DNA of 64,000 nt from Macrostomum lignano (GCA_002269645.1 NIVC01002521.1:62001-126000); one strand, 5' to 3'; counted from the stretch's first letter, positions 426 through 29,610 are shown. Made by a program: numbers and translations. The notes: generated by a model from the sequence alone, not told the origin.

Positions 426-503
<78 letters not shown>

Positions 504-545: not shown

Positions 546-552
546 TTTTCAC

Positions 553-2722: not shown

Positions 2723-2740
2723 GATATTATAGGATAATAT

Positions 2741-5082: not shown

Positions 5083-5450
5083 ATCTGCTAGTTCAGCTGT
5101 TCCAATATATGGGTGCGCCCCCAAACAGTGGCTTGCCCCTCTTTCTCCTCTATGAGGATCAATCCTCTGTCAGCGCACAATCAAACAAACCAAAATATTC
5201 AATAGGCGTAGAATAATGCGGCGAGTGCTGGACTAGGTGGCGGTGCCTACGACCCAGTAACTATACAGTAAGAATTGCTGTGCCTACCTGTTAGTACTGC
5301 TGATGATACTGTGATCCGACGTATACCTTTTCCTGACTCCGCCTCTCTTTACCTTTTTACAATCCAATTATTTTAAACTGCAAATGCTTCTTTTACACCT
5401 GGCTTTTGCCTTGCTTATATTTTTACTCTTATTTTTATCCTAAGCCAAAT

Positions 5451-6310
5451 GTAACAGTAACAGTAATAAGTATTCGGCGCCTCAGCCATTGATTAGGCTC
5501 TTACGCCACTAGATAGAAATTGATTCCAGGTTGGGAGTGTACTTATGTACACTGAGATCCTAATTGGAGCTAAGAGGACTGTACAAAGGGCAAATGACAA
5601 ATCAAAAACCTCCCCGGGGGACAGTGACAGCGGAACGACATACCAGTCAGGAAGCCCGTGCCCAAAAAACCTGGTTAGATAGACCCCTTGTCAATTAGGG
5701 TTGGCCCGAAGGCCGAGAGCCGTGGCTACCATGCTGGGGCTGACCACCCACCACCCCCGGGTACTCAAGCCAAACATAACAAAACCTCCCCGGGGCCAGA
5801 GGGGGTTGAGTGAACCATTCAGGGAAGCCCGTGCCTTTTCCAGGGTTAGAAAGGCCAAAACACCGGTCATAAGACCGCCCCCACGGCCGTGGCCACCCGA
5901 AGGAGCCTCCCCCCCCAACTAAACCCCGGGTACTCTTGCCAGACAGTCTCTTATCTTTGAAGCGGCAGGAGGGCTAATCGCCGGGACTATTTCACCCTTT
6001 GCTTCGCCAACCCGCCATTTCTATTGTGACCGTGCCAACGGTCTCGTCCTGCTCAGACTCAGTCCTGGTTCTGGCACACTCCAGCTTTAATAGGGTCGCT
6101 GGCTGTTCGCTCAGAGGGCACTTGAGGGAGTCCGTCAAAGCACCAACTGGAACAGGTATAGGCCTGCCTTCCTATACAGCTACCCACAGCCCTTCCTGAT
6201 CCACTATTACCCTCCATCCCAGCCTACTCACTCATTACAAGCTTTCAGCCAGGCAGAGACAAGTTTCACGGGGGTACTGCGGTTAGGCGCCTTTATGCGA
6301 GACAAAACCA
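5451..6310 (-). mobile_element. SINE-like non-coding retroelement, copy D1
   Basis: 16-bp target duplication TTATCCTAAGCCAAAT (5435-5450 and 6311-6326); minus-strand 3' tail TTATTACTGTTACTGTTAC; high identity to 13154-13995 in inverted orientation. Confidence 0.8.
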
Positions 6311-6674
6311 TTATCCTAAGCCAAATATAGAAATAATGCTTCTTACATAAACTTTTAGTTATATGTGCCAAGCAGGCCAATCCAATATATTTCGTGTAGG
6401 GGCTGCTACTAGTAGTAGTTCCTGCCGCATAGCTATTATATTATATTTTTACCAAATACAAATATTTGAATACTGATTTAAAACCTTCGCGCTGATTCCC
6501 CTTTCGGTCCAAAATATCTTTGTGAGGACCCGTCCCAATTTCTGTAGAGTTCCTTCCTCTATCAGTTGCGACCACTTCTTTGTTTTTATTCCTAAATGTA
6601 AATAATTAATTTAAATCGAATATTTTAACTCTCGTATAACCAATACTTAGCAAATTTTTTTTAATTTAAATATA

Positions 6675-6743
6675 TCGGCAGAGCCCTACCCGGGCTGAAC
6701 CGAGGTGTCTTCAGCACCACTCGTTTAACAACAACGACGGTCC
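6675..6743 (+). promoter_or_regulatory. LINE 3'-terminal double hairpin, (AAC)n tail and GACGGTCC target remnant
   Basis: TCGG-CAG-AGCCC-loop-GGGCT-GAA-CCGA, then GGTG..CACC, then AACAACAAC GACGGTCC. Confidence 0.8.
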
Positions 6744-6747
6744 TGCT

Positions 6748-9365: not shown

Positions 9366-9382
9366 AATGAAATAAATTAACA

Positions 9383-12256: not shown

Positions 12257-13153
12257 GCTGACCCCTATTCAGGCTCAAAACTAGATTGCGCGAGCTAAGC
12301 CATCGGCTTCCCCCCCTTCCGACTTCTAAGTCCTCTTCGCCTTTCAACATCCTTCAGTATCCATAAAACCACAAAAAATGCTTGCTTACTTCCTTGACTT
12401 CTTCCCCCCGTCTCCTTGATAGCCGTGTGTCAGCGCAGAAAACTTATAACCAAAACTTGCTACTAAATATGAAAATTAGGCGAGTGCTTGACTGGTTGGG
12501 GAGAGGCCTATAAACCAGCAGTAAATTGGGGGTTTAAACGAGAACTTTCTTACCTGTGATCGCCTCCTTTTGCATTGTGTCGCACCGCCGTTTTTCTTTT
12601 CTTTTCTTTTGTATTTAATACTGCTGTTTTATTTTATAATCCAATATTTACACGCGCGCCTTCTACAACTTGGCCAAATGCGTTTTTTATCCGGCTTTTG
12701 CCATTTTACACCCAAAAATTTTTTTTTATTCTATACCCAATATTCTTTTATTTACGTGTTTTTACTCGTTAATGCCGTACCATACCTACTAAATTATTTT
12801 CTCAAATGGCTGCTACTTATAGTAGCGTCTTTAACATACTTCAAACATTTCTTTTATTTTTCATTCATTATCAATACCAATAACAGTTTTATCTCTCAGT
12901 AATGCCAATATTGACTGCACTACTCCCCTTACTGTATGGTCCAGATCTTTGTGAGGACCCCCCTCTCTATCAGAATTCCCTCTATTTTTTTAGTGCAAAA
13001 TATTTTATTCTCCGAATGTAAATATCAATATATATATATCGAATTTTTAATTTCCTGTACCAATACTCATAATTTTAAAATAATAATACATCGGCAGAGC
13101 CCTACTCGGGCTGAACCAAGGTGCCCCTTCTTAGCACCGTCGTTTAAGAACAG

Positions 13154-14014: not shown

Positions 14015-16170
14015 CCTGAGCCTACCGTGGTACAAGCAGCTCCGACGACAACTCAGTCTGCACCGTCAGCAAGCAGCTCCTTGTCTACCGTGACCAAGCA
14101 GACCGTACCAACTGCCAGTAGTTTTGAGCCAGCCTCAACTGTAACAAAGATGAACAATCCTGCCTCCAATGCTGCCAACGGTGAGAGGGGCTTTACTCAG
14201 GGTGACGTGCTCGAGGTGGTTCTCGGAGCACTCAACCGGATCATGGAGATCGAACCGGGGCGTCTGCTCACTGCCTGGGAAGCAAGCCAGCTTGCTATTC
14301 GGGTAGTGACGGAAGTCCTGACGACCTTCCTGAATCCCGGAAGAGTGCCCGCTGTCAGGGCAGGTGAAGCTAAAGCCACTTCGGTGAGCGGAGGCGGATC
14401 TGAGTCCTGAAATAAATATCAAACTACTTAATGGCTTTCGATAATAAATCTCCCAACAGTACGCTTAATATAGGACACCTGAACTGTAACAAATTAAGCA
14501 ACAAAATGCACAAATTATTATGTGGTTGCACAATGATAACATTGACATTGGTCTTTTCTCAGAAACTGATCTTAAAATAATGATAAATTTTATGCACAAG
14601 GTTATGCCATCTGCTTCCAACCTCTGCTTAAACTTGGTCAGGACTTGATTCCATATCATGATTCTGTTACATTCTTGGCATCACACTCGACAAGGATCTT
14701 AACTATAGGCAACACATTTCAAAGACTGGTGGCATCTCGATCGCCAAACTCGAGGCTTTGAGAAGAATCGCTCGCAACACGAGAATCTCCCAACTTGCGC
14801 TTCGACTTTTTTATAGGTCCTACATTTAAAGCAGCATGACCTATGGTGCTCCAATTCTGGTTAACACCTCTGATGTTATCATGCAGAGTCTTCAGCGGCT
14901 CCAGAATCAGGCACTGAGGGTTGTGCTTGGTGCCCCTAAATACACCAAAATTAACTACCTACATGAAACCACCAAGATGCCTAGGCTCAGGAAGAGGATA
15001 TGGAACCTAGGCCTTAGGTGGTACAAAAAGGTTCTGCTCACAGGAGTGCACGGCTTTCACTCTGATAAAAAAATCTGGAGCATACCAGGGTTTAGAGAAC
15101 CAGTCACGACTAAATTCAGGAAAGCCATTAATCAAACACATCAATATTAAAAAACTCACATTGAGCCGTTCCTGGGTGAGATCCTCTCATGGTTGATTGA
15201 TCCTGTAGTGCTGTAATTAACTGCAGCGTGCAAATCTGTTCGTACATATCAAAAAGTTTTACTATTTGGGACATAAAATCCTGCCATTCTTGATCCCATT
15301 CTTGTCCTTCCTTTCTTTGGACATCCCTAAGGACTTCCTAAGGAATCCCTAAAATTTAAAGTGTTAATTCCCTTATCAAGCGTCTAAGCCTTCTATTTTT
15401 CTTCCCCTCAGCTGCCAGCAACTCTGTAAGTTTGTATTAATTCTTATTTATAGGGTTAAATAGCTCTCTTGACTATTTAACCTTTTACCCATAAGGGCCT
15501 ATAGTAAACTAGTTTTATTATTTGTGGACCCTAAGTCCCTACCTACTTCTAACTCTTATTTGTATAAGCTAGAGCTTTGCATACTCTCTCTTTTGAGGTA
15601 TTTCTCAGCTCTGAGCCTTACTTACTTTTTCTAAAATATTAATTTCTAATTTTACACTATTTAAATAGGAAAAATCTAAATTAATTTCTCTAAGCCTCAT
15701 ATTTAATTCTAAAATTTTTATTTAATTATCATAAGCTGCAGCTCTATTAGATCTCTCTTCTGAGACCAGGCTCAGCTTCTAACTCCAAAAACTAACCTAG
15801 CTAATAAATTTTTCAAATTTACACTAATTACATACGCTAAAATTTAAAATATTAATTTTGCAGTAGACCCCTGCTCAAAATTTTTCAATAATCTAATAAC
15901 TTTGCCTAGGCCACCTAAGCTTCCTTTTTAAGTTGCTAAGTGGTCCTACATCAGTTTCTAAATAGCTAAACTTAACATAGAAAAAAGCAAAAAATCAAAA
16001 AAAATTAAATTGTAATTATAAAATAAAATACTACATACAGTAATTAATTTATTTACTTATAGCATACTGTAATTCATTTACATTATTTATTAAATTGTTG
16101 CCAGCAGCATCCTTGCCTCTTCTTTAATTAAAATTGCAAAACTAGGTATTAGGAAATCCTCTTCTTTCTT
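14015..16170 (+). mobile_element. LINE family C copy C1 (5'-truncated, about 2.1-kb internal ORF2 deletion)
   Basis: ORF1 C-terminus (14027-14410); ORF2 start MAFDN..IGHLNCNKL at 14431 joined near 14612 to the post-RT region; collinear with copy at 43077-46010; right boundary approximate. Confidence 0.85.
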
Positions 16171-16341
16171 CCTCTTGGAGACCGTCTGCGCGCGCGCAAA
16201 ATACCTGCAAAGCAAAATTCCAAATTGCAATAAGGCCTGCGACTCTAACTGCTCACTGCTCTGCCTTCCACTAGCTCTTACCTTTGTGAAAAGAGCAAAT
16301 AGTTTTATTTTATTTTATAGTTAATAATTATATTAGCAGAC

Positions 16342-19293
16342 ATGAGCAGGCAGATCCCGCCTACTAAACTTACAAAACCCTCTGGGCTACCTGCGGCCAA
16401 GCGTGCTGACAACCGCTCATCGGTAGATAAGATGGAGGCCTTTGGCCGAAATCTCCTAGGCCTAGGAAAAAAACCAGCACGGCCAGCTGCCGGTCCTTCT
16501 GGTGCTGCAACTACCGCTGGAGCAACGAGCGCAGTTAGCAAAGTGCCCAACAGCAACAGGGCCTCCAGGAGCAGCGCGGACAGCATCCCGCCGGATGCCC
16601 CGTACAGCCAAGCAGCCATTAGCTGTCCGGCTGGCATGGACTGTGCACCAGCACCGCCATCGGACACGCCACCATCTCCTAGGGAAAAGGCTGAGGCAGT
16701 TACGCCGGCTTCAATGCCAAATCCAGCCGAAGTACCTAAGGTACAATATTCCAATGACAACGCATCTACTAGACCAAAGTCTCCGGTGCTTGCAATCCCA
16801 GCAGAGCAGCCAAAATCACCAGAAGGCGCCATCTCCATATCGTCGGCAAGTAGCTCTGGCTCTGCGACTGTGTTGGAAGGTGCTGGCCAAGCCGGCTCCG
16901 AAGACCCCAACGCAGCCGCAGCAGCATCTGATTCTGCGTCTGAGGCAGACTCCGCGAACGCCGGCTGTGTCGATCTCGATGCTGAGGACGCAAGCATACC
17001 GTATGAGAATCCAATAGGCTTTCCAATAGGCGCGGACAAATCGGGGCTACAAATCAAGCTGCCTAGTCAAGACGTACGACTGGAGTACTATCCGAACATG
17101 CTCCGCAGCGTAGCCGCCGATGTCTACGACCGGATAATCCAAGATCTCCTGCCTATCGCGATACGTCACCGGCTTCAGGAACAGCGACGAGTGGTCTGGT
17201 ACGGGCCGGAGTACTCTTACTCTGGAGTTCCGCTCAGCGCCAACAAAAAATGGCACCCGCTAGTCGAGGACATGAAGGACTACCTCGAGCTCAACGCGGA
17301 TATTGGTGCTCCAAAATTTAATAGTTGCCTCATTAATTTCTACGAAACGGCTGATGACTGCATTCTATTCCACGCCGATAACGAACCTGAACTCGGCAGG
17401 GACCCTTTCATCGCTACGGTCTCCTTTGGTGCAGTACGCCAATTCCAAATTAAGAATAATGAGGACCAACGAATTGTAGCGCAATTTGAGACTAAGCCCG
17501 GCTCAGTAATAGTGATGTCCGGTGCATGCCAACGTAAGTGCAAGCACAGTGTCCCAGGAGTCGGCGTCCAGGACGGGGTACGCATATCGCTCACCTTTAG
17601 GGTGACATATCCACCAGGCGTCGGCACACCGGGACACGGAGGCCCAACTGCAGCAGCTGCACACGTCGGAGACGGGCCTGGCAGTGGCCGGGCGGGCGCC
17701 AGCCTGGCCGCGCCGGGCCCCCGGACAGCGATGACCAGCGGGCAGCTAGGAGATCGCGGAGCGGCCGGCGCGCCCGGCTCTGCGGTCCCTGGCGGCCCAC
17801 GAGCCCAGGGCAACGGCGGTGGCAATGTCGGCGGTGCGGGGCGGGGCGGCGATCGCCGGTCCTACGCTGAAATGGCGGCGAACAACAACCAAGATAGATC
17901 ACGGCCCCCGAACAATAACAGGGGAAGTAGTAATGTGGTACCAGTAGTGTTCAACACTGCGGCAGAAACGAGTCAAATTGATTTTCTAAAGTGGCTCGCG
18001 GCCAACTTCCAAGGGTCGGCCCGGGCTACACTCACCAAGAAGTTGACCCATGAAGTCGGCTTCCTCGTGTTTCCGGCTACTCCGCGTGACCACCAGTTGT
18101 TCCTGCGTGGGCCTCTGCGTGAGCCCCAGTTCGCGGGGGGGCCGGTGACGAGGCGCTTACCAAAGGCTCGACCGGACCCAAGAGCTAGGCCTGCTGCGCC
18201 ACAGCGACCAATGACCCGAGCGGTCCACTCGTTCGTGGTGCGCGGCGTGCCTCCGGAGGTCGATGCCAGCGACTTCAAGCGGCACCTGCAAGAAAGCGCT
18301 GGTCTTAATATCATATCAGCTAGCCGTATCACTGCTAGGCGAGACAACAAGCCTACTAACCTAATCAGAATCTTTGTCCGTAACAAACAGACAGTGGACG
18401 CCTGTCTAGCTACAGGAATCGTCACGGATTTTACAACATACCAGTGCGAGCAGAACAAGACCGCAGCTCCGGCACGAGCACCGCAGTGCCAAAACTGCCA
18501 GCGCTTCGGTCACCACGCCCAGAGGTGCAAGGCGGCCAAGCGTTGTCGAATCTGCGCGGCCGAGCACCACTGGCGAGACTGCGACAGCCAGGACGCGGTG
18601 AAATGTGCCAACTGCAAGGAGCCGCACAGAGCAAACTACCGCAACTGCCAGGTGGCGATCGATTGCCACAGTGCGGCCCAAAGGCGTGCGGCTGCCTACG
18701 CAGCGGGCGCCCGAGAAGCCGCGGCAGCAACAGACAGTTCGACCGCTCCACCACCTATTGCAGCAGCAGCGGCGGTAGTAGCATCAGCAGCATCAGCAGA
18801 GGCAGCGGCAGCAGCGGCGCCACCCGCCCCCGCCCCCGCACTGGCACCAGCTCCGGCAGCAGCACCGAGATGGGTCGACGCCGCAGCACGGGCGACAACG
18901 GCGACAGGGGGCGACGATCCGTTTTGGCTCACCGGCCCTGGCCTCCCTAGCCGAAAGCGCCCTGTGCGCGAATCGACCGACTCGGAGACGCAGACAACTG
19001 CGCCGGATGAATCCTCCAGCAATGACACGCCGCCAAATGCCAGAGAAGTCTCCCAGCTTCAGGAACTGGTGAGTGGGTTCCTTCCCCTCTTGGTCCAGGC
19101 ACTAGTAGAGGTGCTGTCGACTCTCTGGCAGAGCCCGGCTGAACGGCCGCCTACTACCGAAAGCTCCCGTCAAACGGTGCAAGACGTAGTAGGTAGGGTT
19201 CTGGCCCGGATCCTCGAAGGCGAATCGAACAGTCACCAGGGTCTTGGTCAGCTGCTTGGCGCCTCCCGGCGACAGGCGGATGGCCAGACCTAG
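16342..19293 (+). CDS. LINE ORF1p, 983 aa: low-complexity N-terminus, AlkB-like 2OG-Fe(II) dioxygenase, G/A linker, PRE_C2HC-like region, 3 CCHC zinc knuckles
   Basis: Uninterrupted ORF. AlkB at about 17074-17604 with NFY, H-A-D, distal H (KHSVP) and R-ISLTF-R; knuckles CQNCQRFGHHAQRC, CRICAAEHHWRDC, CANCKEPHRANYRNC. Confidence 0.95.
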   Translation: MSRQIPPTKLTKPSGLPAAKRADNRSSVDKMEAFGRNLLGLGKKPARPAAGPSGAATTAGATSAVSKVPNSNRASRSSADSIPPDAPYSQAAISCPAGMDCAPAPPSDTPPSPREKAEAVTPASMPNPAEVPKVQYSNDNASTRPKSPVLAIPAEQPKSPEGAISISSASSSGSATVLEGAGQAGSEDPNAAAAASDSASEADSANAGCVDLDAEDASIPYENPIGFPIGADKSGLQIKLPSQDVRLEYYPNMLRSVAADVYDRIIQDLLPIAIRHRLQEQRRVVWYGPEYSYSGVPLSANKKWHPLVEDMKDYLELNADIGAPKFNSCLINFYETADDCILFHADNEPELGRDPFIATVSFGAVRQFQIKNNEDQRIVAQFETKPGSVIVMSGACQRKCKHSVPGVGVQDGVRISLTFRVTYPPGVGTPGHGGPTAAAAHVGDGPGSGRAGASLAAPGPRTAMTSGQLGDRGAAGAPGSAVPGGPRAQGNGGGNVGGAGRGGDRRSYAEMAANNNQDRSRPPNNNRGSSNVVPVVFNTAAETSQIDFLKWLAANFQGSARATLTKKLTHEVGFLVFPATPRDHQLFLRGPLREPQFAGGPVTRRLPKARPDPRARPAAPQRPMTRAVHSFVVRGVPPEVDASDFKRHLQESAGLNIISASRITARRDNKPTNLIRIFVRNKQTVDACLATGIVTDFTTYQCEQNKTAAPARAPQCQNCQRFGHHAQRCKAAKRCRICAAEHHWRDCDSQDAVKCANCKEPHRANYRNCQVAIDCHSAAQRRAAAYAAGAREAAAATDSSTAPPPIAAAAAVVASAASAEAAAAAAPPAPAPALAPAPAAAPRWVDAAARATTATGGDDPFWLTGPGLPSRKRPVRESTDSETQTTAPDESSSNDTPPNAREVSQLQELVSGFLPLLVQALVEVLSTLWQSPAERPPTTESSRQTVQDVVGRVLARILEGESNSHQGLGQLLGASRRQADGQT

Positions 19294-19310
19294 AGCAATA
19301 AAGAATAAAT

Positions 19311-21119
19311 ATTTTCGGTAATAACGGGCACGATAGCTCGAACCCCACTGCCTCAGGGCTAAAGATTGGCCACCTAAACTGCAGGGGGGTAATACCGAAA
19401 CTAAAAGAACTCAGGCTCTGGGTCTCAGATCAGAAATTGGATATTGCATTGTTCTCTGAGACCATCCTGAAAAATACCCAAGTATGCACTTTCCCGGGCT
19501 ATGCTGCAGTGCGGTTTGACCTTCCGAATACGAAGCGCGGACTCCTCCTTGTTCACACCCCACGGGTTAAGGTAGCTGACGTCCAGCTCTCGTATGACAA
19601 CATCAACCACGAGGTCCTTACCTGCACAGTCACTCCTGTTGACGGCGCATGTCCTCCTTTCCAACTATCTCTGGTCTATCGGTCCCCGTCGCCGGATAAC
19701 CTCGACACTGCACTCTTGACGAGGCTGTCCTCGGCTAAATACTCGCTCATCATGGGAGACCTCAACGCTAGACACAGCTTCTTGGGTGGTGAAAGTCGCA
19801 ACAACAGAGCAGGGCAGCAGCTCCATGATTGGCTATGCGGCGATCCATCCCACCGCCCCACCGTTCTCAACCAACCAGGCCAGTTCACTAGAATAGCCCA
19901 CCGGCAAGGCGTTGTGTCCCGGAATGTGCTTGACCTTGGGTTAGCCTCCGGTGACCTCGTCCCATATGTCCAAGACTTTAAAGTGGGCTCTGACCTGGAC
20001 AGTGACCATCTCCCAATCATACTCACCCTGGCGAGTAACTCTCCAGATTGGCAAGGGCCGGAGAAGGCTAGGAACTTTGCCAAGGCAAACTGGGATGAGT
20101 TCCAAAACTCTTTGATGGAAAAACTGGTACATGCGTGGCCTCCAGACCTTAGTACTAGGCAGCAGATTGATGCGGAGGTCGACATCATCACAAACGCGAT
20201 CCAGAAAACCATCGAGGACAATGTCCCGGTTAGAAACAGCCGTAGAGCCCTCCCCCAGAGGATCATTGCCATGATCAAGGAGAGGAGGAGGCTCCGGCGT
20301 CAGTACCACAGTACCAGGGACGACAATTTTAGGCTGCTCGCGAATAGAAAGGCGAAAGAAATAAAAAGCGCTATTCATTCGTTTGAACAAGGCCAGTTTA
20401 CCCAAATGTGCGAGAAAATAGTTGAAAAAAGTCAATGCCGGAATGTCAAGGACTTCTGGCAGGACACAAAAAAATTGATGGGGCCTAAGAAGGGCACCAC
20501 TATCCCGTCCTTAAATGATGGCGCCACCCTCGCACATACTGACTCAGACAAAGCTGATATGCTAGCGAGAGCACTAGATGCCAAAATGCGCCCGATGCCA
20601 TCGACTGACGAGGATCTGAAGAAGAGGGTTGAGCAGGCTATGAAGCTCCCCATCTTTAGACCAGTCCCCTCGGGCGTAGATCCACACATGGGCCACCCCC
20701 TGGAGGCTCCTTTTTCTGTTACAGACACCCTCTGGTAGCTGGACCACCTAAAAGTTGATAGTGCTCCGGGCCTGGACAAAGTTCCGAACTGCGTCCTTAA
20801 ATATGGCCTGGAGCCTATAGCAGTCACCCGCATCACTTAACTCTTTAATGATTGCTATCGTACGGGCATCTTCCCATCGCAGTGGAAAAAAGCGGTGGTG
20901 ACGATGATTCCTAAACCTGACAAACCTCCTGAATCCCCGAGATCCTATCGGCCCATCAGCCTGACCTCCTGCCTCGGCAAGGTGTTCGAGAAGTTATTGG
21001 TGAGGAGGCTGATGAAGCATCTTGAGGGCCAGGCTATCCTCGGCGCGGATCAATGTGCGTACCGGAAGGTTCACTCAACTTATGATAACCTTGTCCGCCT
21101 CGTCCAAGACGTCCAGGTG
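19311..21119 (+). pseudogene. LINE A2 ORF2, 5' part (APE plus N-terminal RT)
   Basis: ATT in place of ATG at 19311; APE motifs; stops at 20736 and about 20837; interrupted at VQV by the transposon. Confidence 0.92.
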
Positions 21120-24100
21120 CACAGCGCGCAGGAGCTGCGTGTAAGGGTTAAAAAAATCAAGTACAAAGCGACCTGCTTTATTGTGTTCACCATTACCTGG
21201 TAAGTATTTTTCTAGAGTTTTTAAAAAATCTGCCGATGTCAAGCTCCACAATCAGTAAATTATTTAATTAGCATTAATTGCATGGCGAAAGGTCTAAACA
21301 AGTCATGATTTTTATCCAAGGACCATTGATTTTTTAAGCTAGGGTCGTTGCACTATTACATGCATGTTATGTATAGTGTATTATATAATTTTTGTGACAG
21401 TTTATTGTATAAATTCGTGTGCATAGCCTAGAATTGGAAACAATTTATAGTGTTAAATAAATAGAAAGTAAGTTACACATAGTAATAGAAAAGTATAACT
21501 AAAAAACAGTAAGAAATACAGATAGGCGACAAATTTATGTCTTTTCAAATTGTAGAAAATAATTTTAGTTCTTGGTGTAGCCACAGTTGGAGTAAAGCTG
21601 AGAGAAAATTTGTGGCAGAATGTCCATAGACTATTTCGTGCCATGAGAGTCTAAAACACTGCATGACATGAGAAGCCTTGCTGTGAAGTTTCAGGGGTTG
21701 ATTTGTCTATGACCAGACCTCAAAATAGAGAGCTCCAACTGTAACCTCACCAAAAATTAAACAAAAAACCTGAATTTGTCCCCTATTTGTCAAAACAAGA
21801 CTTCTGGTGCACCAATCGGTTTTAAAGTAACTCGGATATTATTGCACCTTCAACAGAACTGCTTACAGCACAGTAGCCCATTTTACAGATGCCGCGAGCT
21901 GTACACCGTGATGCACCTAAGCAAACGCCGAGCATACTCCGGATGAGTTGCATCCACCTTGAAGCGTTGACTCCACATGTCGCTGAAGTCGCGATGTGCC
22001 GACTCCATCGCCTGCTCAGACCAAAACCCAAGGCCTCGGCGACACCCATATTGTACTGCCATCGCTTCCAAAAACTGCGGCACGTGGTCAATGAGGGCAT
22101 GGGCCTTCGGAGTGATGTTGATGGCCAGAGCGTGGTATGCCGCCTCGAACTCTTTGACTGCTGTATCATAGCCTTCAAGCAGTTGTTGGCCGAAGCACTT
22201 CTGCTGGACAGCTCGCAGGCAGCTGAATGCATGGGCGACAGGCACTCCGCTGAAGGCAGCATGGTCAGCGAGGATCTGGCGCAGGCTGTCGACTCCACCA
22301 AGCAGTCGGTCGCACTCATTGCCATTGAACTGGCTGCCGTGATACGGTGAGCGCCGTACGTGAAGAGCCTCAGCCCACTGTGCACCACGGACTCCGTCGG
22401 GACCCAATGCTGTCAGGCGCTGCTCAAGCTCGTCGTACAGCCTGTTGACAAGGCCTAGCAGCAGGTGGAGCTCCATGGGTGGCACGGCTTCTAGCGTGTT
22501 TGAACTGTCTGGCCAATTCAGCAGTGGTTGCCTGATGCAGTTGTGGAATGGCTCTCCTGATGGCTTTGAGCTTCGTTGCCCCTCGATGCGCTGATACTGG
22601 GCAGCTTGGCTGCGAATAGAGCCAAAAGTCCGCAATCTGACACTGCGATGGGGATTGGCGAACTCTTTTCGAGGCGTCTCGCACCACGGGCAGGGATGGG
22701 CGCTGCTGGCGCTCTGCAGTCCAAGAAGCACATTTGCAAGTTTCATGTCCACGGAGCTGCAGAAAGACACGTCTTCTAGGTTCAGCAGATTGAGCACAGT
22801 TTGCACGTTCTCATAGTACTCCGGTACTTTTTCAACTGCTGCGATAATCAATAGCTTCCTTACACCACCTTCGGCAAAAGGGCTGCTGCCGGCCTCGGTG
22901 ACACCGCCTAGTAGAACAGATGACTGCTCCCCGGACCGGACCAATGTCATGCAAACTTTAAAAAAGCCGCGTCCTCCATCAATACCAATCTTAAGCAGGA
23001 AGCTGCCAGGATCAGGATCCATTCTCCGCCGTGCCAGCACGTAGCCCACCAAGCCAGAGACGTTGGAGCAGAACACAACAGTCCGCGTTTCAAATTCGCC
23101 CGTGCTGCAACGGACTGGGACTGACTCTGTTGCATAAAATGGATCCAACTCGCTATTCAATTCTGCCAGGCGATGCAGGAGGTTTGGCTCGATCGAACTG
23201 CGACCCTTCCACTCACGGAAGAACTGGGCCGCCTGTCTGGTTTGCCGACCACTCAAACCGATCGCATCCTGCATCCTGGCAATCTCACTAGCCGGCACTG
23301 ATTTGTCACCAAATGCACCCGCGGAGCACCTGCTACTCTGAGCGGACACGCTTAGCGTGATTGGGCGGCCTCGAGTTGCCAGCCGAATAGGCGAATCGCC
23401 ACCTGCGTCTGTTAACTTGGCTTTGAGGACGTCACTAGCATGAATTTCTGAACCACGCGGATCACGTGACAGCTCAGAGCAGATGTTATTTAGCCAGCGA
23501 GATTGCGTACAGGTGTGGCTAAGACCCCTGCCAATGGTGGAGTGACATCTCTGGCAGATGGTGATGGGACGAGCAGGTGGCACCTCCTTGTTTGGCGAAT
23601 CGGTTTTCGGTCTGCCAAGGCGATGCGGCTCCGGCTTCCAGGTGCCGAGTCCTTTGCCGATTGGACTTTCTCTGGCAATCTCACAGAGACAGCAGCTGCA
23701 CTTCGGGTGGCCCCTTGTTTCCTTTGTCGGTACGACTTTTGAAAAATCAAAAGGGGCAGGAAGAGCTTCAGAAGTTCGATTCCCCCGTTCAATATCCAGC
23801 AGCAGACCCTGGCATCGAGCACACAGAGCAGCTGGGAGAAACTCGTTCTTCAAATCGTAGTTTGCATAAAAGTACCGCTGGATGCGAGGTAGAGCTGCTT
23901 TGCCAATGCGCTGCATGCCTGACCCGCGCTTAAAGCACACAATGCAGACCTTCAGCCGGTTCTCTTCGTGAGATTTTGAGTAGTTTGGCATGGTGGTGTT
24001 CAGTTCAAGGCTTTTCAATTCCTAAATGCTGAGATGAGCTGATTTATGATAAATTAATCATTTATATAGCTCAAAAACAAAAAATCTGCCTGTCTGAGAG

Positions 24101-24491
24101 TGACGCTAAATGCACTCCATTTTTTCGGTGACGCAACTGACGCTACACTGATAGAGGTTGATCATGCGCACTTAGGGGTGTACGGCGCCTCAGCTTTCGC
24201 TATTCGTCATGCATGTACACTGTGCCTTGGGGCTTGGGGGTACGCACTCATGGGTGTGTATTTTGCCTTTAATTTAAAAAATCAATGGTCCTTGGATAAA
24301 AATCATGACTTGTTTAGACCTTTCGCCATGCAATTAATGCTAATTGAATAATTTACTGATTATGGAGCTTGACATCGGCAGATTTTTTAAAAACTCTAGA
24401 AAAATACTTACCAGGTAATGGTGAACACAATAAAGCAGGTCGCTTTGTACTTGATTTTTTTAACCCTTACACGCAGCTCCTGCGCGCTGTG
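21120..24491 (-). mobile_element. Chapaev/Transib-like (RAG1-fold DDE) DNA transposon, copy 1, 3372 bp
   Basis: 218-bp TIRs beginning CACAGCG (21120-21337 and 24274-24491), 5-bp duplication AGGTG; removing the element restores the LINE RT frame. Confidence 0.92.
21883..23991 (-). CDS. DDE transposase, 702 aa from the first ATG
   Basis: N-terminal H-x7-CxxC...CxxC Zn motif; KIGIDGG, DMKLANVLLG..HPCPWC, MELHLLLG, FNGNEC, ITPKAH..HVP, SEQAMESAH, matching the Transib/RAG1/Chapaev motif order. Confidence 0.9.
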   Translation of the reverse strand: MPNYSKSHEENRLKVCIVCFKRGSGMQRIGKAALPRIQRYFYANYDLKNEFLPAALCARCQGLLLDIERGNRTSEALPAPFDFSKVVPTKETRGHPKCSCCLCEIARESPIGKGLGTWKPEPHRLGRPKTDSPNKEVPPARPITICQRCHSTIGRGLSHTCTQSRWLNNICSELSRDPRGSEIHASDVLKAKLTDAGGDSPIRLATRGRPITLSVSAQSSRCSAGAFGDKSVPASEIARMQDAIGLSGRQTRQAAQFFREWKGRSSIEPNLLHRLAELNSELDPFYATESVPVRCSTGEFETRTVVFCSNVSGLVGYVLARRRMDPDPGSFLLKIGIDGGRGFFKVCMTLVRSGEQSSVLLGGVTEAGSSPFAEGGVRKLLIIAAVEKVPEYYENVQTVLNLLNLEDVSFCSSVDMKLANVLLGLQSASSAHPCPWCETPRKEFANPHRSVRLRTFGSIRSQAAQYQRIEGQRSSKPSGEPFHNCIRQPLLNWPDSSNTLEAVPPMELHLLLGLVNRLYDELEQRLTALGPDGVRGAQWAEALHVRRSPYHGSQFNGNECDRLLGGVDSLRQILADHAAFSGVPVAHAFSCLRAVQQKCFGQQLLEGYDTAVKEFEAAYHALAINITPKAHALIDHVPQFLEAMAVQYGCRRGLGFWSEQAMESAHRDFSDMWSQRFKVDATHPEYARRLLRCITVYSSRHL

Positions 24492-25148
24492 AGGTGGGCA
24501 AAGCTAAACTAAAAAGGATTCTGGCCATCCTCCTTGACGTGCAAGCGGCGTTCGACTCAGTGTGGTATGACTACCTGAGGTTCAGGATGCATGAAGTCAG
24601 CACGCCGGACGCCCTCGTCAGGATCTGCTCTGACTACCTAGCAGACAGGCTAATGCAGGTGAAGGTAAATGGGGAGCTCAGCCAGCCGTACGAACTACAG
24701 GCGGGCGTCCCCCAGGGTGGCATTCTGAGCCCCTTCCTGTACCTGCTCTTTATCAGCACCATGCCTCGGCCAATACAACCAAACCTCAAGCGAAGCCAAT
24801 TTGCCGACGATATGGCCATTTGGGCCTCGGCGGACTCCTTTGCTGGCCTCAAGACACTCCTGCAACCCTACCTGGACCGCGTGTGGAAGTGGTGTGGGGG
24901 GCAGGGGATAAAGATCAACGCCAGCAAGAGTCAGGTAATCGCTTTCAATTATAAGCCAACTCAGCGACTCGATCTTCGCCCCAAGCTGAAACTTGGAGGC
25001 ACGAGTCTTGAATACCAAGAAGAGGTCCGGTTCCTTGGCATGAACCTGGACTATCGGCTGACCCTTAACTCGCATGTTGAAAGAGTAGTCAGCCACGGCC
25101 GGGCGCTTGCCCTATCCATCAACCGCATTGCCAAGCTGACCCGGCTAT
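24492..25148 (+). pseudogene. LINE A2 ORF2, 3' part (RT core, C-terminus deleted)
   Basis: LDVQAAFDSVW, GVPQGGILSP, QFADD; jumps into the 3'UTR after AKLTRL. Confidence 0.92.
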
Positions 25149-25560
25149 TTCACACCCCAAATGCTTTTATTTATGGACCTACCATTGTACATATTACAAA
25201 TAACAAACTAAATTATTTTATTGCCTGGCTACTACTTAAAGTAGTCATATTTAACTATTGCCAATATTTTTTTTAGTACTTTAAATTTTCATCCAATAAT
25301 GCGTGCACTACCCCTACAGTATGGTCCAGATCTTTGTGAGGACCCCCTCTATTCAGAATTCCCCCTATTTTAGTGCAAAATATTCTTAATGTAACAAAAT
25401 GTAAATATTTTATTTTATATACCAAATAGTAAACATTAACTCGTTTTTTAATACTTCGCAAACTAAATTCGCCTCTATATTTTTAAATAAATCGGCAGAG
25501 CCCATCTCGGGCTGATCCGAGGGTGCCCCAATTTTCACCCACTCGTTTAACAACAACAAC

Positions 25561-25571
25561 AAAGACGGTCT
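25561..25571 (+). other. Target remnant AAAGACGGTCT (putative SL exon 5' part)
   Basis: Directly follows the (AAC)4 tail; identical 11-mer at 25925 and 27228. Confidence 0.75.
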
Positions 25572-25924
25572 TCCGTAGGTTTAGGAGTAACTCCTCACTC
25601 GGACCGCTTTCTTAGCATTTCGCTCTCCAAATTCTGTTTTTTCGCGCACTCCCGAGGACCTGTCTGCTGGGGGGTGGCCTGGGTGGACTCGGTCCTAGCA
25701 CCGTCCCTGATTCCACTGTTGGTTTGGCGGTGTCTTGTACCATAGACTTGAGGTCCCTCGCCCTTTCCCTAGCTCTAATGCTGGGGCCCAACTAAATTGG
25801 TGATTGGGTATCTCGGGTTCACAGTCTTATCTGTGCCCTTGGTAGTGCCCTCTGCGGCAGAGCCCCTCCCAGGGCTGATCCGCGGGTAGCCCCGTAGCTT
25901 CCCACCCCGTTTAACAACAACAAC
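25572..25924 (+). mobile_element. Short 3'-end-only LINE copy E1
   Basis: Clearly homologous to 26875-27227; same terminal hairpins and (AAC)4 tail. Confidence 0.85.
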
Positions 25925-25937
25925 AAAGACGGTCTCT

Positions 25938-27227
25938 GACTGTTCTTACCCTGGTTGCCTCTCTGGCAGCTTGTCTAAGGGTTGTGCGCAATCCGATTGG
26001 CTATGCCAATTTCTAAGGGTCCGCCCCGGAGCGGCTGTGCCCATCTAAAAATAAACCCTATTTTTCTTAGGTGTACATTCCAAATCTGGCCCTCGGCCTT
26101 GGTTTAGGGGGGGTGGTGCCCGGAGTGAGTTGGTTCTCTGGACTGCAGTGTGGCTAGGACGGGACTGAGCCCCCCGGTCGAACCCGCCCTGCAGGAAAGA
26201 AAATGACCAATTCACAAAGGTGTACGGTAGACCCAGTAGCATGCCAGCCCTGAGGCTGAGCACCCGGGCTGCAGGCCGGCAAGCTGCCTGCTTTAGGGCT
26301 ATGGTGCTCCTCCCCACTGCCATTCTTTTTTTCTGAACTGGCATCCCAGCGCTGTTTTATCCCTAGCTTTGTGCCTTTGTGGCTTTTATTATTTTATTCT
26401 TTTATCTGGCCACTAGAAGCCTTCCAATCTACGGAGTTTTGAGCTCTGCCCTTGCCCGGTCCATCTTGCCCTGTCCTCGGGTCCATCTCCTGGCTCCTGC
26501 TGAAAGGTCCCTGCTTGCGTGTCTCTGGCTCTCATCCTGACAGTGGATTGGTGTCCTGGGAAGGATGTTCGTCCCGAACCGGGGACAACCGGCTGAGTCC
26601 GGAGTCCTCTTGCCCTGGGTGCCTCTTCTCCCGACCCCTTGGCCTGGCCCCCAATAATGAGCTGGATAGGCGATGCCCTTGGGCTGGTAGCAATAGAGGT
26701 GGACGGTCTTCCCGCCTGGAGTCTCCCCCTCGGATACAAGCCTTCCAGACTCACTCCAAAATAGAGCTGGGTAGTGAAAAGCCTTGAGGCTTGAGGCCTA
26801 CAGTTGCGAGATGCTGTATAGGATCGCTCTTGGTAATTAGCTGCCCAGACTCGCTCCAATAGTTTAAGCCTTTTCCGTAGGTTTAGGAGTAGCTCCTCAC
26901 TCGGACCGCTTTCTTAGTAGCTTTTCGCTCTCCAATTTTTCTGCGCACTCCCGAGGACTCGCTAGCTGGGGGGGTGGCCTGGATGGACTCGGTCCTAGCA
27001 CCGTCCCTGATTCCACTGTTTGGGTTGGCGGTGTCTTGTACCGTAGGCTTGGGTCAACTCGCCCTTTCCCTAGCTTTGAGCTGGGTCCAATCCCAATGTA
27101 TTCAAGGGGTATCTCGGGCCCTGGACAGCTAATGCCTTGGCCCCTGGTAGTGCCCCCCAGCGGCAGAGCCCACCCCGGGCTAATCCGCGGGTAGCCAAGC
27201 TTCCCACCCTCGTTCAACAACAACAAC
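25938..27227 (+). mobile_element. 3'UTR-only LINE copy E2 (subfamily E, GC-rich UTR, no coding remnant)
   Basis: Lies between two AAAGACGGTCT remnants; terminal hairpins and (AAC)4 tail. Confidence 0.8.
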
Positions 27228-27238
27228 AAAGACGGTCT

Positions 27239-29610
27239 GGAGTATTACCCGAATATGCTCCGTAGCGTAGCCGCCGATGTCTATGACCGGCTGATCCAAG
27301 ACCTCCTGCCTATCGCTATACGTCACCGGCCTCAGGAACAGCGACGAGTGGTTTGGTTTGAGCCGGAGTACTCTTACTCTGGAGTTCCGCTCGGTGCCAA
27401 CAAAAAATGGCACCCGCTAGTTGAAGACATGAGAGACTACCTCGAGCTCAACGCGGACATTGGTGCACCAAAATTTAATAGCTGCCTCATAAACTTTTAT
27501 GAAACGGCTGATGAATGCATACCTTTCCACGCCGATAATGAACCCGAACTCGGCAGGGACCCGTTCATCGCTACGGTCTCCTTCGGTGCAGTACGCCAAT
27601 TTCTAATTAAGAACAATGAGGACCAGCGAATAGTGGCGCAATTCGAGACAAAGCCCGGCTCAGTGATAGTAATGTCCGGGGCATGCCAACGCAAATGTAA
27701 GCACAGTGTCCCAGGAGTCGGCGTCCAGGAGGGTGTACGCATTTCTCTCACCTTTAGGGTGACATATCCACCTAGCGTCGGCACACCGGGGCACGGAGGC
27801 TCGACCGCGGCAGCAGCACCCGTCGTGCAAGGGCCTGGCAGAGGCGGGGCGGACTCCGGTCCTGCTACGCCGGGCCCCCGGACGAGCGCGGCGACCGGGC
27901 AACCAGGCAGCAGTGGGGCGGCCGGCGCGCCCGGCCCTGCTGCGCTTGGCAGACCCCGCAACCGGGACCAAGTCCAAGACCAAAGCGGCAACGTTGGTGC
28001 GGGGCGCGGTGGCGCAGCACAGCGGTCCAACGATCAAGGGCGCTCCTATGCGTCAGCTGCGGGTCAAGGCAAAAATAAAAACAATCAAAATAATAATATT
28101 AATAATAGTAATGCTGTACCTGGCCGACAGAACGTTGTTCCCGTCGTATTTACCTTCGACGGCGACACCGGCGACAGCAACTTCTCCCAAATTAACTTTC
28201 TAAAGTGGTTGGCGGCTAATTTTCAGGGCAACGCCCGAGCCACGCTGACCAGGCCAACTAGCTCGAAGAACGGCTACCTAGTTTTCCCAGCGACGCCCAG
28301 AGATCATCAGATCTTCCTTCGAGGGCAGCTGAGGGAGCCAAACTTCAATGGCGTAGCGGTCAACCGTAGGCTGCCAAACGCCAGACCAACGCATAATAGA
28401 CCCGCTAACCGGCCACCTCCAGTCCAATCGGTGCACTCCGTGGTTGTCCGGGGAGTGCCGGTTGAGATCGAGATGCCGGCATTCATCCAGCACCTGCGGG
28501 AGGACGTCGGTTTGAAGGTCATCTCAGCAAGCCGCATTACGTCGCGTGCACGCAATGAGCCGACCCACCTCGTCCGCCTATTCTTACCTAACAAAGCCAC
28601 TGCGGACGCTTGCCTAGCAATGGGCATCGTTTCGCAGTTCACGACGTATTCCTGCGAACCCAGCAAGACAGCTGCTCCGGCAAGGGCGCTCCAGTGCCGC
28701 AAATGCCAGCGCTTCGGCCACAGCGCGAACAGGTGCCGTTCTGCTCCGCGCTGCAACATCTGTGCGGCGGCGCATCGCTGGCAAGAGTGCCCGAACCCGG
28801 AGGTAGCAAAGTGTGCAAACTGTGGCGAAGCCCATCGTGCTAACCACAGGAACTGTCCGGTAGCTGCTGAGAAGCACAGCCAGGCGGCCCGGCGAGCTGC
28901 AGCCTTTCAAGCCGGCGCCCGGGAAGCCATGGCAGCAGCAGCTCCGCCACAGGCACAAGCAGCAGCAGTAACTGAGCGAGCTGCACCAATAGTAACGTCG
29001 GCGGCGACGGCAGCAGCAGCAGCAGCAGCGCCACCCGCCCCTGCACCACGACCAGCCCTGGCGACGGCGTCAAGACTGACCGAGACCGCTGCGCGGGCGA
29101 CAACGGCCACGGGGGGCACTGACGACGACTCGTCCTGGCTAACCGGCCCCGGCCTCCCTGGTCGAAAGCGCCCTTTGCGCGACTTGGTCGACTCCGTGAC
29201 CCAGACGCAGCCGCCAAGTGACCAGATGCCGAAAAATGACCTGCCACCAAATATGCTAGATGCAATTGAAGCTATGGTGAGTGGGCTCTTTCCCAGACTG
29301 GTTCAAGCGCTCGTAGAGGTGCTTACGATCCTCTTGCCGGGCCGGGCCGAACGGCCGCCTACTACTGAAGGCACCGGTCAAACGATGCAGGACGTAGTAG
29401 GTAGGGTTCTGATTCGGGCCCTAGCAGGAGGGTCGGAAGGTCACCAAGGTCTCGGCCAGCTGCTTGGCGCCCCTCGGCGACAGGCGGACGGCCGTACCTA
29501 GAATGAAACAAAACAACAATGTTCGGTAGTAACGGGCAGAACAGCTCCAACCCCACTGCCTCAGGGCTCAAGATCGCCCACCTAAATTGCAGGGGGATAA
29601 TACCAAAACT
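27239..29610 (+). mobile_element. LINE copy B2 (5'-truncated at the start of AlkB; cut off at the start of ORF2)
   Basis: Starts at LEYYPNM; ORF2 stub from ATG 29519 ends abruptly at 29610. Confidence 0.9.
27255..29501 (+). CDS. LINE ORF1p, open 748-aa frame (AlkB-like domain plus subfamily-B gag)
   Basis: FHADNEPELG, KHSVPG, RISLTFR; CRKCQRFGHSANRC, CNICAAAHRWQEC, CANCGEAHRANHRNC; the true N-terminus is lost by truncation. Confidence 0.9.
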   Translation: MLRSVAADVYDRLIQDLLPIAIRHRPQEQRRVVWFEPEYSYSGVPLGANKKWHPLVEDMRDYLELNADIGAPKFNSCLINFYETADECIPFHADNEPELGRDPFIATVSFGAVRQFLIKNNEDQRIVAQFETKPGSVIVMSGACQRKCKHSVPGVGVQEGVRISLTFRVTYPPSVGTPGHGGSTAAAAPVVQGPGRGGADSGPATPGPRTSAATGQPGSSGAAGAPGPAALGRPRNRDQVQDQSGNVGAGRGGAAQRSNDQGRSYASAAGQGKNKNNQNNNINNSNAVPGRQNVVPVVFTFDGDTGDSNFSQINFLKWLAANFQGNARATLTRPTSSKNGYLVFPATPRDHQIFLRGQLREPNFNGVAVNRRLPNARPTHNRPANRPPPVQSVHSVVVRGVPVEIEMPAFIQHLREDVGLKVISASRITSRARNEPTHLVRLFLPNKATADACLAMGIVSQFTTYSCEPSKTAAPARALQCRKCQRFGHSANRCRSAPRCNICAAAHRWQECPNPEVAKCANCGEAHRANHRNCPVAAEKHSQAARRAAAFQAGAREAMAAAAPPQAQAAAVTERAAPIVTSAATAAAAAAAPPAPAPRPALATASRLTETAARATTATGGTDDDSSWLTGPGLPGRKRPLRDLVDSVTQTQPPSDQMPKNDLPPNMLDAIEAMVSGLFPRLVQALVEVLTILLPGRAERPPTTEGTGQTMQDVVGRVLIRALAGGSEGHQGLGQLLGAPRRQADGRT

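What the first reader, a model, noticed from the sequence alone, without database searches (positions are those of the whole stretch)
25549..27238. Head-to-tail LINE array punctuated by the 5' end of the flatworm spliced-leader exon: apparent SL-gene targeting by an APE-type LINE
Seen: immediately after the (AAC)n tails stands AAAGACGGTCT (25561, 25925, 27228) or GACGGTCC (6736), followed each time by a differently truncated next element. At 25925 the match runs AAAGACGGTCTCTGACTG. From memory, the Macrostomum lignano SL is CCGTAAAGACGGTCTCTTACTGCG... (17/18 identical) and the planarian SL1 starts GCCGTTAGACGGTCTT. Established: repeated target-primed insertion at one site gives element-TSD-element arrays. 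The SL-targeting retroelements I know (NeSL, CRE, SLACS, CZAR) use restriction-like endonucleases. Inference: this APE-RT family nicks at CCGT^AAAGACGG with an approximately 11-13-bp duplication, which would be an independent origin of SL targeting.
Basis: partly seen in the sequence, partly recalled or inferred. Interest (0 to 1): 0.93.

Follow-up and report, generated by a model that had tools for sequence, protein, structure and literature searches.

The report
LINE array spaced by spliced-leader fragment
A flatworm-type jumping gene (an APE-type LINE) and its short partner sit head to tail, and every tail is followed by the same 11 bases, which match part of the Macrostomum spliced-leader exon; this suggests, but does not prove, that the family lives in spliced-leader genes.

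Summary
(AAC)4+AAAGACGGTCT occurs three times exactly (25549-25571, 25913-25935, 27216-27238). An older junction reads (AAC)3+GACGGTCC (6727-6743). Each follows the conserved, structured 3' end of one LINE family or its short partner.

The 11-mer equals nt 5-15 of the spliced leader (SL) published for three Macrostomum species. One junction matches nt 5-22 at 17/18. ORF2 is APE+RT with no restriction-like nuclease. The closest named ORF1 relatives are Macrostomum lignano proteins.

New support: complete copies, and a related M. lignano LINE in a tandem array, begin with T(1-3)CCGT, which is SL nt 1-4. The two termini therefore rebuild an SL site cut at CCGT^AAAG.

No remainder of an SL gene exists in the window or in 28 kb of M. 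lignano.

Best model (about 0.5): source copies sit in SL genes and their RNA carries SL flanks. Arrays then arise by re-use of the carried 11-mer or by template jumping.

In passing: ORF1 carries an intact ALKBH3-like dioxygenase, which I did not find reported for LINEs.

The parts
1..6735 (+). LINE copy A. Its 5' end lies outside the window. ORFs are broken and the 3' UTR is long. It ends in the 3' module (6676-6726) and (AAC)3 (6727-6735).
   Evidence: Self-BLAST, profile of 3' ends, sequence.
6736..6743 (+). Older spacer GACGGTCC, equal to SL nt 8-14 plus one mismatch. It lacks the AAA.
6744..13152 (+). LINE copy B, 5'-truncated inside ORF1 (aligns from C ~16864). It has the AlkB domain, a broken ORF2 and a degenerate tail (GTTTAAGAACAG). 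It is followed not by the 11-mer but by an inverted copy of A 5465-6292 (13154-13982).
16140..25560 (+). LINE copy C, nearly full length; the 5' end at ~16140 is approximate. ORF1 is 16342-19293, with an AlkB-like domain at ~17158-17601 followed by an RRM-like region and CCHC knuckles. The APE part of ORF2 is 19437-20738. The RT is split by a DNA transposon (21120-24491) and resumes at 24494-25276. The 3' module is 25493-25548 and (AAC)4 is 25549-25560.
25561..25571 (+). Spacer AAAGACGGTCT (SL nt 5-15), first copy.
25572..25924 (+). Element D, a 353-bp non-coding partner. Its 5' end TCCGTAGGTTTAGGAG resembles the full-length 5' end of the M. lignano LINE. Its last ~70 nt are the LINE 3' module plus (AAC)4.
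25925..25935 (+). Spacer AAAGACGGTCT, second copy. With the next 7 nt (CTGACTG) it matches SL nt 5-22 at 17/18.
25936..26872 (+). X: 937 bp, non-coding, unique in the window. It is either genomic flank or sequence carried at the 5' side of E'. It is not a recognisable SL gene.
26873..27227 (+). Element E', a second copy of the short partner (82.6% identical to D), with the same 5' start (TTCCGTAGG) and (AAC)4. Its 5' flank (...AGTTTAAGCCTTT) lacks the 11-mer.
27228..27238 (+). Spacer AAAGACGGTCT, third copy.
27239..29610 (+). LINE copy F, 5'-truncated inside ORF1 (aligns from C 17080). ORF 27255-29501 carries the AlkB domain. The copy breaks off at 29610, at the start of ORF2, against unrelated AT-rich DNA, so its 3' end and downstream flank are not in the window.

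Best explanation
The window holds copies of one APE-type LINE family (ORF1 = ALKBH3-like dioxygenase + RRM-like region + CCHC knuckles; ORF2 = APE + RT). It also holds a 353-bp non-autonomous partner that shares the LINE's structured 3' end and (AAC)n tail.

I propose that source copies of this family sit in spliced-leader RNA genes, inserted between SL nt 4 and 5 (CCGT^AAAGACGG). They would be transcribed from the SL gene start and read a few bases into the downstream half of the SL exon. The retrotransposed RNA would then be CCGT-element-(AAC)n-AAAGACGGTCT(...), so every new copy takes both halves of the SL site with it.

A copy landing outside an SL gene still deposits the 11-mer. The next element joins there in one of two ways. 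Either the endonuclease or primer annealing re-uses the carried 11-mer, or the reverse transcriptase jumps from the end of one RNA to the 3' end of another. Either route gives element-11-mer-element arrays.

Shown: the anatomy, the APE+RT type, the identity of the spacer to SL nt 5-15 (17/18 to nt 5-22 at one junction), the CCGT 5' termini, and the missing 11-mer at the free 5' junctions.

Inferred: residence in SL genes, co-transcription, and how the arrays were built.
For: 1. The spacer is SL nt 5-15 of three Macrostomum species. A spacer defined independently by its position after the tail matches an SL 11-mer on either strand with P about 1.6e-5. The 7-nt extension at 25936 matches at 6/7 (P about 1.3e-3).
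2. The closest named ORF1 relatives are M. lignano proteins.
3. Complete elements start with T(1-3)CCGT: D at 25571, E' at ~26873, and the M. lignano LINE at each array unit. CCGT is SL nt 1-4. In M. lignano the termini read TTTCCGT...(AAC)2 AAAGA, which rebuilds SL nt 1-9.
4. The tail plus 11-mer (23 nt) is identical in three junctions of elements that are 14-30% diverged. It was therefore laid down at each insertion, not inherited by duplication.
5. The 11-mer is absent upstream of C and of E'. This fits a motif carried at the 3' end of the RNA rather than a duplication on both sides.
6. The 3' stem-loop is conserved with compensatory changes between LINE, partner and M. lignano copies. This fits sequence-specific recognition of the RNA 3' end by the RT.
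7. ORF2 is APE+RT only.
Against: - No SL gene remainder (nt 23-44, splice donor, Sm site) is seen next to any copy, in the window or in 28 kb of M. lignano.
- The M. lignano relative carries only AAAGA after its tail, not the full 11-mer.
- The base before CCGT is T in the elements but G in the assembled M. cliftonense SL.
- The host species is inferred, not identified: no window protein is in the collection.
- The 5' end of C is placed by a weak alignment (p about 0.02).
- Only one genomic region of this family could be examined. The closest homologues in other samples (57% identity) lack the 3' module.
Confidence: 0.5

Rival explanations
1. The 11-mer is a target-site duplication made by repeated target-primed insertion at a single SL-derived site, so each insertion is flanked by it on both sides.
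For: It explains element-11-mer-element junctions simply. The leftmost M. lignano unit is preceded by AAAGA, the same bases that follow each tail. The A/B junction lacks AAA, as if priming slid on the target.
Against: The 11-mer is missing at the 5' junctions of C and E'. Both would need a target deletion. Three separate arrays within 21 kb would need three pre-existing copies of the site. No CCGT-11-mer or 11-mer-CTTACTGCG context is present.
Confidence: 0.15
2. The 11-mer is simply the family's own fixed 3' terminus. Its core AGACGGTCT is a palindrome, and a complementary AGACCGTCT lies in C's 5' UTR at 16177. The SL match would then be coincidence, with arrays formed by RT template jumping or by homing to the element's own end.
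For: The motif always follows the tail and never appears alone. It is followed once by unrelated DNA (X). AAAGA after the tail is conserved in the M. lignano relative. C's 5' UTR carries AGACCGTCT, and a 57%-identical relative has GGAGACGGTCTGC.
Against: It needs a 1.6e-5 coincidence with the SL of the very genus that holds the closest relatives, plus the 6/7 extension and the CCGT 5' termini. In known LINEs with microsatellite tails, the repeat is the very end of the element (my knowledge).
Confidence: 0.2
3. The array is a product of tandem or segmental duplication, unequal recombination or misassembly, and the spacer is an arbitrary junction that was copied along.
For: The M. lignano array consists of 99.3-99.6% identical full-length units with a 6457-bp period, which could be unequal crossing-over.
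Against: In the window the neighbours are different elements of different lengths and 14-30% divergence, yet the 23-nt junction is identical.
Confidence: 0.05
4. The SL fragment comes from trans-splicing of element transcripts before retrotransposition. This was proposed for partial-leader loci next to LINE/LTR elements in parasitic flatworms (PMC12582326).
For: 597 partial-leader loci associated with mobile elements were reported there.
Against: Trans-splicing would place the 3' end of the leader (...TTATTGCATG) at the 5' end of a transcript. Here the fragment is nt 5-15, it follows a 3' tail, and the same fragment precedes differently truncated elements.
Confidence: 0.03

Closest known systems
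R1-clade and Tx1-clade target-specific APE LINEs (R1Bm, TRAS1/SART1; Keno in U2 snRNA genes)
   Same: APE-type endonuclease N-terminal to the RT. The same sequence flanks independent copies and the elements form head-to-tail arrays. The proposed target is a multicopy small-RNA gene. TRAS1 EN is the best isolated endonuclease structure hit (E 9e-13). PMC4640811 states that APE-type target-specific LINEs belong to these two clades, and that Keno (APE) and Utopia (restriction-like) hit the same U2 site independently.
   Different: The target would be the SL exon, which I did not find reported for an APE LINE. Clade membership was not tested. ORF1 carries an AlkB domain. No copy here is flanked by both halves of an intact target gene.
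SL-exon-specific retrotransposons: CRE1/CRE2, SLACS, CZAR (trypanosomatids) and NeSL-1 (nematodes)
   Same: Insertion inside the spliced-leader exon of a multicopy SL RNA gene. Use of the SL gene promoter by such elements is from my own knowledge and was not checked here.
   Different: Those encode a restriction-like endonuclease C-terminal to the RT (PMC4640811). This family has an N-terminal APE domain and no such nuclease, and it occurs in a different host phylum.
Stringent LINE/SINE pairs with a shared 3' stem-loop and short-repeat tail (eel UnaL2/UnaSINE1; from my knowledge)
   Same: The LINE and its non-autonomous partner share only the ~70-nt structured 3' end and a short-repeat tail, here (AAC)n.
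   Different: Those insert without site specificity and have no constant sequence after the tail.
Partial SL leader loci next to LINE/LTR elements in parasitic flatworms (PMC12582326)
   Same: Partial leader sequence is physically associated with retroelements in flatworm genomes.
   Different: There the loci were discarded and ascribed to trans-spliced element transcripts. Here the 5' part of the leader follows the 3' tail, which that explanation does not produce.

Membership tests
APE-type non-LTR retrotransposon (LINE) | N-terminal apurinic/apyrimidinic-like endonuclease followed by a reverse transcriptase in ORF2 | tested here: met
   PF14529/PF03372 and PF00078 in window copies and in the intact M. 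lignano ORF2. A profile of the family matches L1 ORF2p over residues 3-769, and also TRAS1 EN, APE1 and ExoIII.
APE-type non-LTR retrotransposon (LINE) | 5'-truncated copies sharing a common 3' end with a simple-repeat tail | tested here: met
   B and F are truncated inside ORF1. Five 3' ends share one module plus (AAC)n.
Target-specific LINE | Independent insertions flanked by the same target sequence on both sides | tested here: inconclusive
   The 3' side is constant at 4 junctions. The 5' side shows it only where another tail precedes. C and E' lack it. Termini CCGT...AAAGACGGTCT rebuild SL nt 1-15.
Target-specific LINE | Copies found inside the multicopy target gene, with the rest of the gene on either side | tested here: not met
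   No SL nt 23-44 or other SL gene parts in the window or in 28 kb of M. lignano. The genome-wide test was not possible.
R1 or Tx1 clade | Placement of the RT within the clade in a phylogeny with reference elements | not testable with these tools
   No reference set of classified RT sequences was available. The only hints are the best named hits labelled 'jockey' and the TRAS1 EN match.
CRE / NeSL SL-specific retrotransposons | Restriction-like (PD-(D/E)xK) endonuclease C-terminal to the RT | tested here: not met
   Only APE and RT domains were found in the intact 926-aa ORF2 and in window ORFs.
CRE / NeSL SL-specific retrotransposons | Insertion at a fixed position of the SL exon | tested here: inconclusive
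   The termini imply nt 4/5 of the Macrostomum SL, but no occupied SL gene was seen.
LINE with a non-autonomous partner sharing its 3' end | Shared, structured 3' end with otherwise unrelated, non-coding body | tested here: met
   D and E' share ~70 nt with the LINE and have no coding similarity. The stem-loop shows compensatory changes in 3 of 9 pairs.
AlkB / ALKBH3-like 2OG-Fe(II) dioxygenase (ORF1 domain) | HxD...H iron triad and RxxxxxR 2-oxoglutarate motif in a PF13532 fold | tested here: met
   PF13532 at E 1e-22 to 2e-23. Best solved relative is ALKBH3, E 1.9e-24. H-A-D, H-S-V-P and R-I-S-L-T-F-R are intact in B, C and F.

The most novel reading that the evidence does not exclude
An APE-type LINE lineage of macrostomid flatworms, together with a short non-autonomous partner, integrates at nt 4/5 of the spliced-leader exon. 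It is expressed from the SL RNA gene's own promoter, so its RNA begins with SL nt 1-4 and ends in SL nt 5-15. It also carries an ALKBH3-like nucleic-acid demethylase in ORF1. This would be a second, independent invention of SL-gene parasitism with a different nuclease, combined with an element-encoded demethylase.
Probability: 0.35. Interest if true: 0.8.

Novelty: new variant of a known kind. Interest (0 to 1): 0.6.

Why it matters
Target-specific LINEs show how a selfish element can persist by hitting multicopy genes. How APE-type nucleases acquire long, specific targets is still studied in only a few cases (R1Bm, TRAS1, SART1). An APE LINE aimed at the SL exon would parallel the Keno/Utopia case, where APE-type and restriction-like elements hit the same U2 site, but for a different gene and phylum.

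It would also give a new sequence-specific endonuclease and RNA 3'-end recognition pair in a flatworm that can be made transgenic. In addition, it would reinterpret the 'partial leader' loci next to LINEs that were discarded in flatworm SL surveys.

Separately, an intact ALKBH3-like domain in a LINE ORF1 suggests that the element removes base methylation from its own RNA or cDNA. In the papers I could search, that idea has been documented only for an orchid Gypsy element and for plant viruses.

Tried and rejected
1. Scans of viral and metagenome contigs for AACAACAACAAAGACGGTCT. All but two hits lie in one conserved phage coding sequence (...YLNNNKDGLGLSG...). The other two are single chance hits, so nothing related was found.
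2. Search for closer family members by ORF2. The best hits are 57-58% identical Logan contigs (L001-L003). They lack the 3' module, the tail and the 11-mer.
3. Whole-ORF1 search failed, probably because of low-complexity regions. A trimmed query worked.
4. Exact look-ups of 15 window ORFs. None is in the collection, so the source genome and further copies could not be reached.
5. Organism identification through the DNA transposon protein.
6. P0123 has no contig on record. P0124 is a phage/bacterial AlkB and is irrelevant.
7. X (25936-26872) as an SL gene. No Rfam match, an unremarkable fold (z = -1.67), no ATG|GTAAG donor, and similarity to the SL stops after 18 nt.
8. AGACCGTCT at 16177 as a degenerate duplication upstream of C. 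Rejected, because C's 5' UTR aligns with the D and M. lignano 5' ends from ~16143, which puts the motif inside the UTR. That alignment is weak (p about 0.02).
9. AGACAGTCTCTTA at 5941 and 13493, and the 10-mer at 51023. Both are within chance expectation for a 64-kb window.
10. Rfam and tRNA scans of the whole window found nothing.

Full report
OBSERVATION. The motif is there as described. AAAGACGGTCT occurs exactly three times (25561, 25925, 27228, + strand) and nowhere else, even with one mismatch allowed. Each copy is preceded by exactly (AAC)4. A fourth junction at 6727-6743 reads (AAC)3 GACGGTCC. At 25925 the sequence continues AAAGACGGTCTCTGACTG.

ANATOMY. Self-comparison resolves the following pieces.
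- A (<1-6735) and B (~6744-13152) are LINE copies. B is truncated in ORF1.
- 13154-13982 is an inverted copy of part of A's 3' UTR. It abuts B's degenerate tail, so B gives no information on what originally followed it.
- C (~16140-25560) is nearly full length. Its RT is split by a 3.37-kb DNA transposon at 21120-24491.
- D (25572-25924) is 353 bp.
- X (25936-26872) is a 937-bp stretch with no match elsewhere in the window and no coding similarity.
- E' (26873-27227) is 82.6% identical to D.
- F (27239-29610) is a LINE truncated in ORF1. It breaks off against unrelated DNA, so the downstream end of this array is not in the window.

A profile of the 3' ends finds exactly these five ends and no solitary one. 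D and E' share only the last ~70 nt with the LINE. That shared part folds into a two-helix stem-loop, with compensatory changes in 3 of 9 pairs among LINE copies, partner copies and an M. lignano relative. D and E' are therefore copies of a non-autonomous partner that uses the LINE's 3' recognition element.

THE ELEMENT. ORF2 carries Exo_endo_phos_2 and RVT_1. A profile of the family aligns to human L1 ORF2p over endonuclease plus RT, and to TRAS1 EN, APE1 and ExoIII. The intact 926-aa M. lignano ORF2 shows only these two domains. The family is thus APE-type, with no restriction-like nuclease.

ORF1 is unusual. It has a PF13532 2OG-Fe(II) oxygenase domain (E about 1e-22 in B, C and F) that is closest to human ALKBH3 (E 1.9e-24). 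The HxD...H and RxxxxxR motifs are intact. An RRM-like region and CCHC knuckles follow.

HOST AND SL. The trimmed ORF1 query returns four hits. The top three are Macrostomum lignano proteins at 48-50% identity.

The same sequence was assembled for M. cliftonense (with a 5' G) and M. hystrix (PMC10468722 supplement).

The spacer is SL nt 5-15, and the D/X junction matches nt 5-22 at 17/18. The spacer is defined by its position after the tail, independently of the SL. The relevant chance is therefore about 1.6e-5 for the 11-mer and 1.3e-3 for the extension. SL 11-mers occurring somewhere in a 64-kb window would not be remarkable in themselves; about one is expected. No window protein is in the protein collection, so the host is inferred to be a macrostomid, not identified.

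THE M. LIGNANO RELATIVE. The two M. lignano ORF1 genes lie on NIVC01002892.1. I obtained 28.4 kb of that contig.

It holds three full-length units of a related LINE (ORF2 62.7% identical to B). The units are head to tail with a 6457-bp period and 99.3-99.6% identity. The junction reads ...CGGCAGAGttcttcggaaCTGA...CACCTCGTTTTAACAAC|AAAGA|TTTCCGTGGAGGGATACTCTTAGGAG. The leftmost unit is preceded by ...TTTTACT|AAAGA. There is no GACGGTC and no SL sequence in these 28 kb.

Two points follow.
- First, the 5' start of D and E' (T/TT+CCGTAGGTTTAGGAG) resembles this full-length 5' end (TTT+CCGTGG...TTAGGAG). D and E' therefore look like complete elements rather than random truncations.
- Second, complete elements begin with CCGT, which is SL nt 1-4, and their tails are followed by SL nt 5 onward. 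The caveat is that the two families are homologous, so this is not fully independent evidence. Also, the base before CCGT is T in the elements and G in the assembled M. cliftonense SL.

A target-site duplication should flank each insertion on both sides. Two 5' junctions can be tested because no tail precedes them.

E' is preceded by ...AGTTTAAGCCTTT. C is preceded by AT-rich DNA ending ...TTGCAAAA. C's 5' UTR aligns with D and with the M. lignano 5' end from about 16143 (p about 0.02). This places the nearby AGACCGTCT (16177, the reverse complement of the spacer core) inside the UTR. Neither junction has the 11-mer.

The motif thus behaves as something attached to the 3' end of the upstream element. 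Moreover, neither the window nor the M. lignano locus contains any other part of an SL gene. X is not a recognisable SL gene.

MOST LIKELY MECHANISM (confidence about 0.5). Source copies reside in SL genes at nt 4/5. They are transcribed from the SL start and read through into the downstream exon half. The RNA, and hence each new copy, carries CCGT at the 5' end and AAAGACGGTCT after the tail.

Three elements from diverged subfamilies all have exactly (AAC)4 plus the 11-mer. This argues that reverse transcription starts downstream of the tail on a templated sequence, and that the tail is not built by slippage.

Arrays at ectopic loci then arise in one of two ways: re-use of the carried 11-mer as a landing site, or template jumping from one RNA to the 3' end of the next. 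I cannot separate these two here. The older A/B junction ((AAC)3 GACGGTCC) is read as a decayed or slipped version.

RIVALS.
- Pure duplication at one site (0.15) needs deletions at both free 5' junctions.
- An intrinsic palindromic terminus with a coincidental SL match (0.2) explains the 3' association and the conserved AAAGA. It must, however, accept a 1e-5-level coincidence with the SL of the genus that holds the closest relatives.
- Duplication or recombination (0.05) fits the M. lignano array but not the window, where neighbours are different elements.
- Trans-spliced element transcripts (0.03; PMC12582326) would give the 3' part of the leader at a 5' end, not nt 5-15 after a tail.

COMPARISON WITH THE KNOWN. 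According to PMC4640811, SL exons are targets of elements with restriction-like endonucleases (the CRE and NeSL clades). APE-type target-specific LINEs belong to the R1 and Tx1 clades. Keno (APE) and Utopia (restriction-like) hit the same U2 site independently.

I found no report of an APE-type SL-targeting LINE, nor of one in flatworms. If the model is right, this is a new target for a known kind of element, and a second example of two nuclease types converging on one small-RNA gene. Clade membership could not be tested.

VERDICT. The SL origin of the spacer is well supported. SL-gene targeting is plausible but not shown, and the duplication mechanism is not supported. The finding is a new variant of a known kind, with interest 0.6.

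Noticed in passing
window 17158-17601 (C), within 6748-7788 (B) and 27255-29501 (F); L022 10001-11146; L001 2-330: The LINE's ORF1 carries an ALKBH3-like 2OG-Fe(II) dioxygenase domain ahead of the usual RRM-like/CCHC part, and the iron and 2-oxoglutarate motifs are intact. It is also present in the M. lignano relative and in a 57%-related Logan contig. My literature searches found AlkB domains only in an orchid Gypsy element, not in LINEs.
   Followed up: partly
window 21120-24491 and 46588-49958: Two 99.97% identical copies of a 3.37-kb DNA transposon with 218-bp terminal inverted repeats starting CACAGCG and short duplications (AGGTG; AATA). One copy splits the RT of LINE C. Its 702-aa ORF has no Pfam or PDB match but 3340 homologues in the representative library, so it is a widespread, unclassified transposase.
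   Followed up: partly
L022/L023 (M. lignano NIVC01002892.1, 88611-107289): Three head-to-tail, 99.3-99.6% identical full-length units of a related AlkB-LINE with a 6457-bp period and an intact 926-aa ORF2. The array's right end is beyond the fetched DNA.
   Followed up: partly
window 13154-13982 (-) versus 5465-6292 (+): A 95%-identical inverted copy of part of A's 3' UTR is joined directly to B's degenerate tail. The origin is unknown: a rearrangement or a twin-priming-like event.
   Followed up: no
window 16175-16187; L002 5496-5508: C's 5' UTR has GGAGACCGTCTGC, whose core is the exact reverse complement of the spacer core AGACGGTCT. A contig of a 57%-related LINE from another sample has GGAGACGGTCTGC 2.4 kb downstream of its ORF2. 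It is unresolved whether this is a conserved 5' UTR element able to pair with the 3' end, or chance.
   Followed up: partly
window 25493-25548, 25855-25912, 27161-27215, 6676-6726, 13092-13152; L022 16113-16170: There is a conserved 3' stem-loop (CGG...AGCCC-loop-GGGCU...CCG). The inner helix changes to AGUUC/GAACU with a UUCG loop in M. lignano, and the outer pair switches between U-A and G-C. It is a likely RT recognition element.
   Followed up: yes
window 14403-15278, 43049-46009, 30615-31280, 35220-36461: The rest of the window is a mosaic of other mobile elements: a second, unrelated LINE family, a mariner-like HTH ORF, and an LTR-retrotransposon RT-RNase H. No host gene, tRNA or Rfam RNA was found.
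   Followed up: no
L004-L021 (viral and metagenome contigs): The 20-mer AACAACAACAAAGACGGTCT is conserved within one phage coding sequence (...YLNNNKDGLGLSG...). This is a coincidence unrelated to the LINE.
   Followed up: yes
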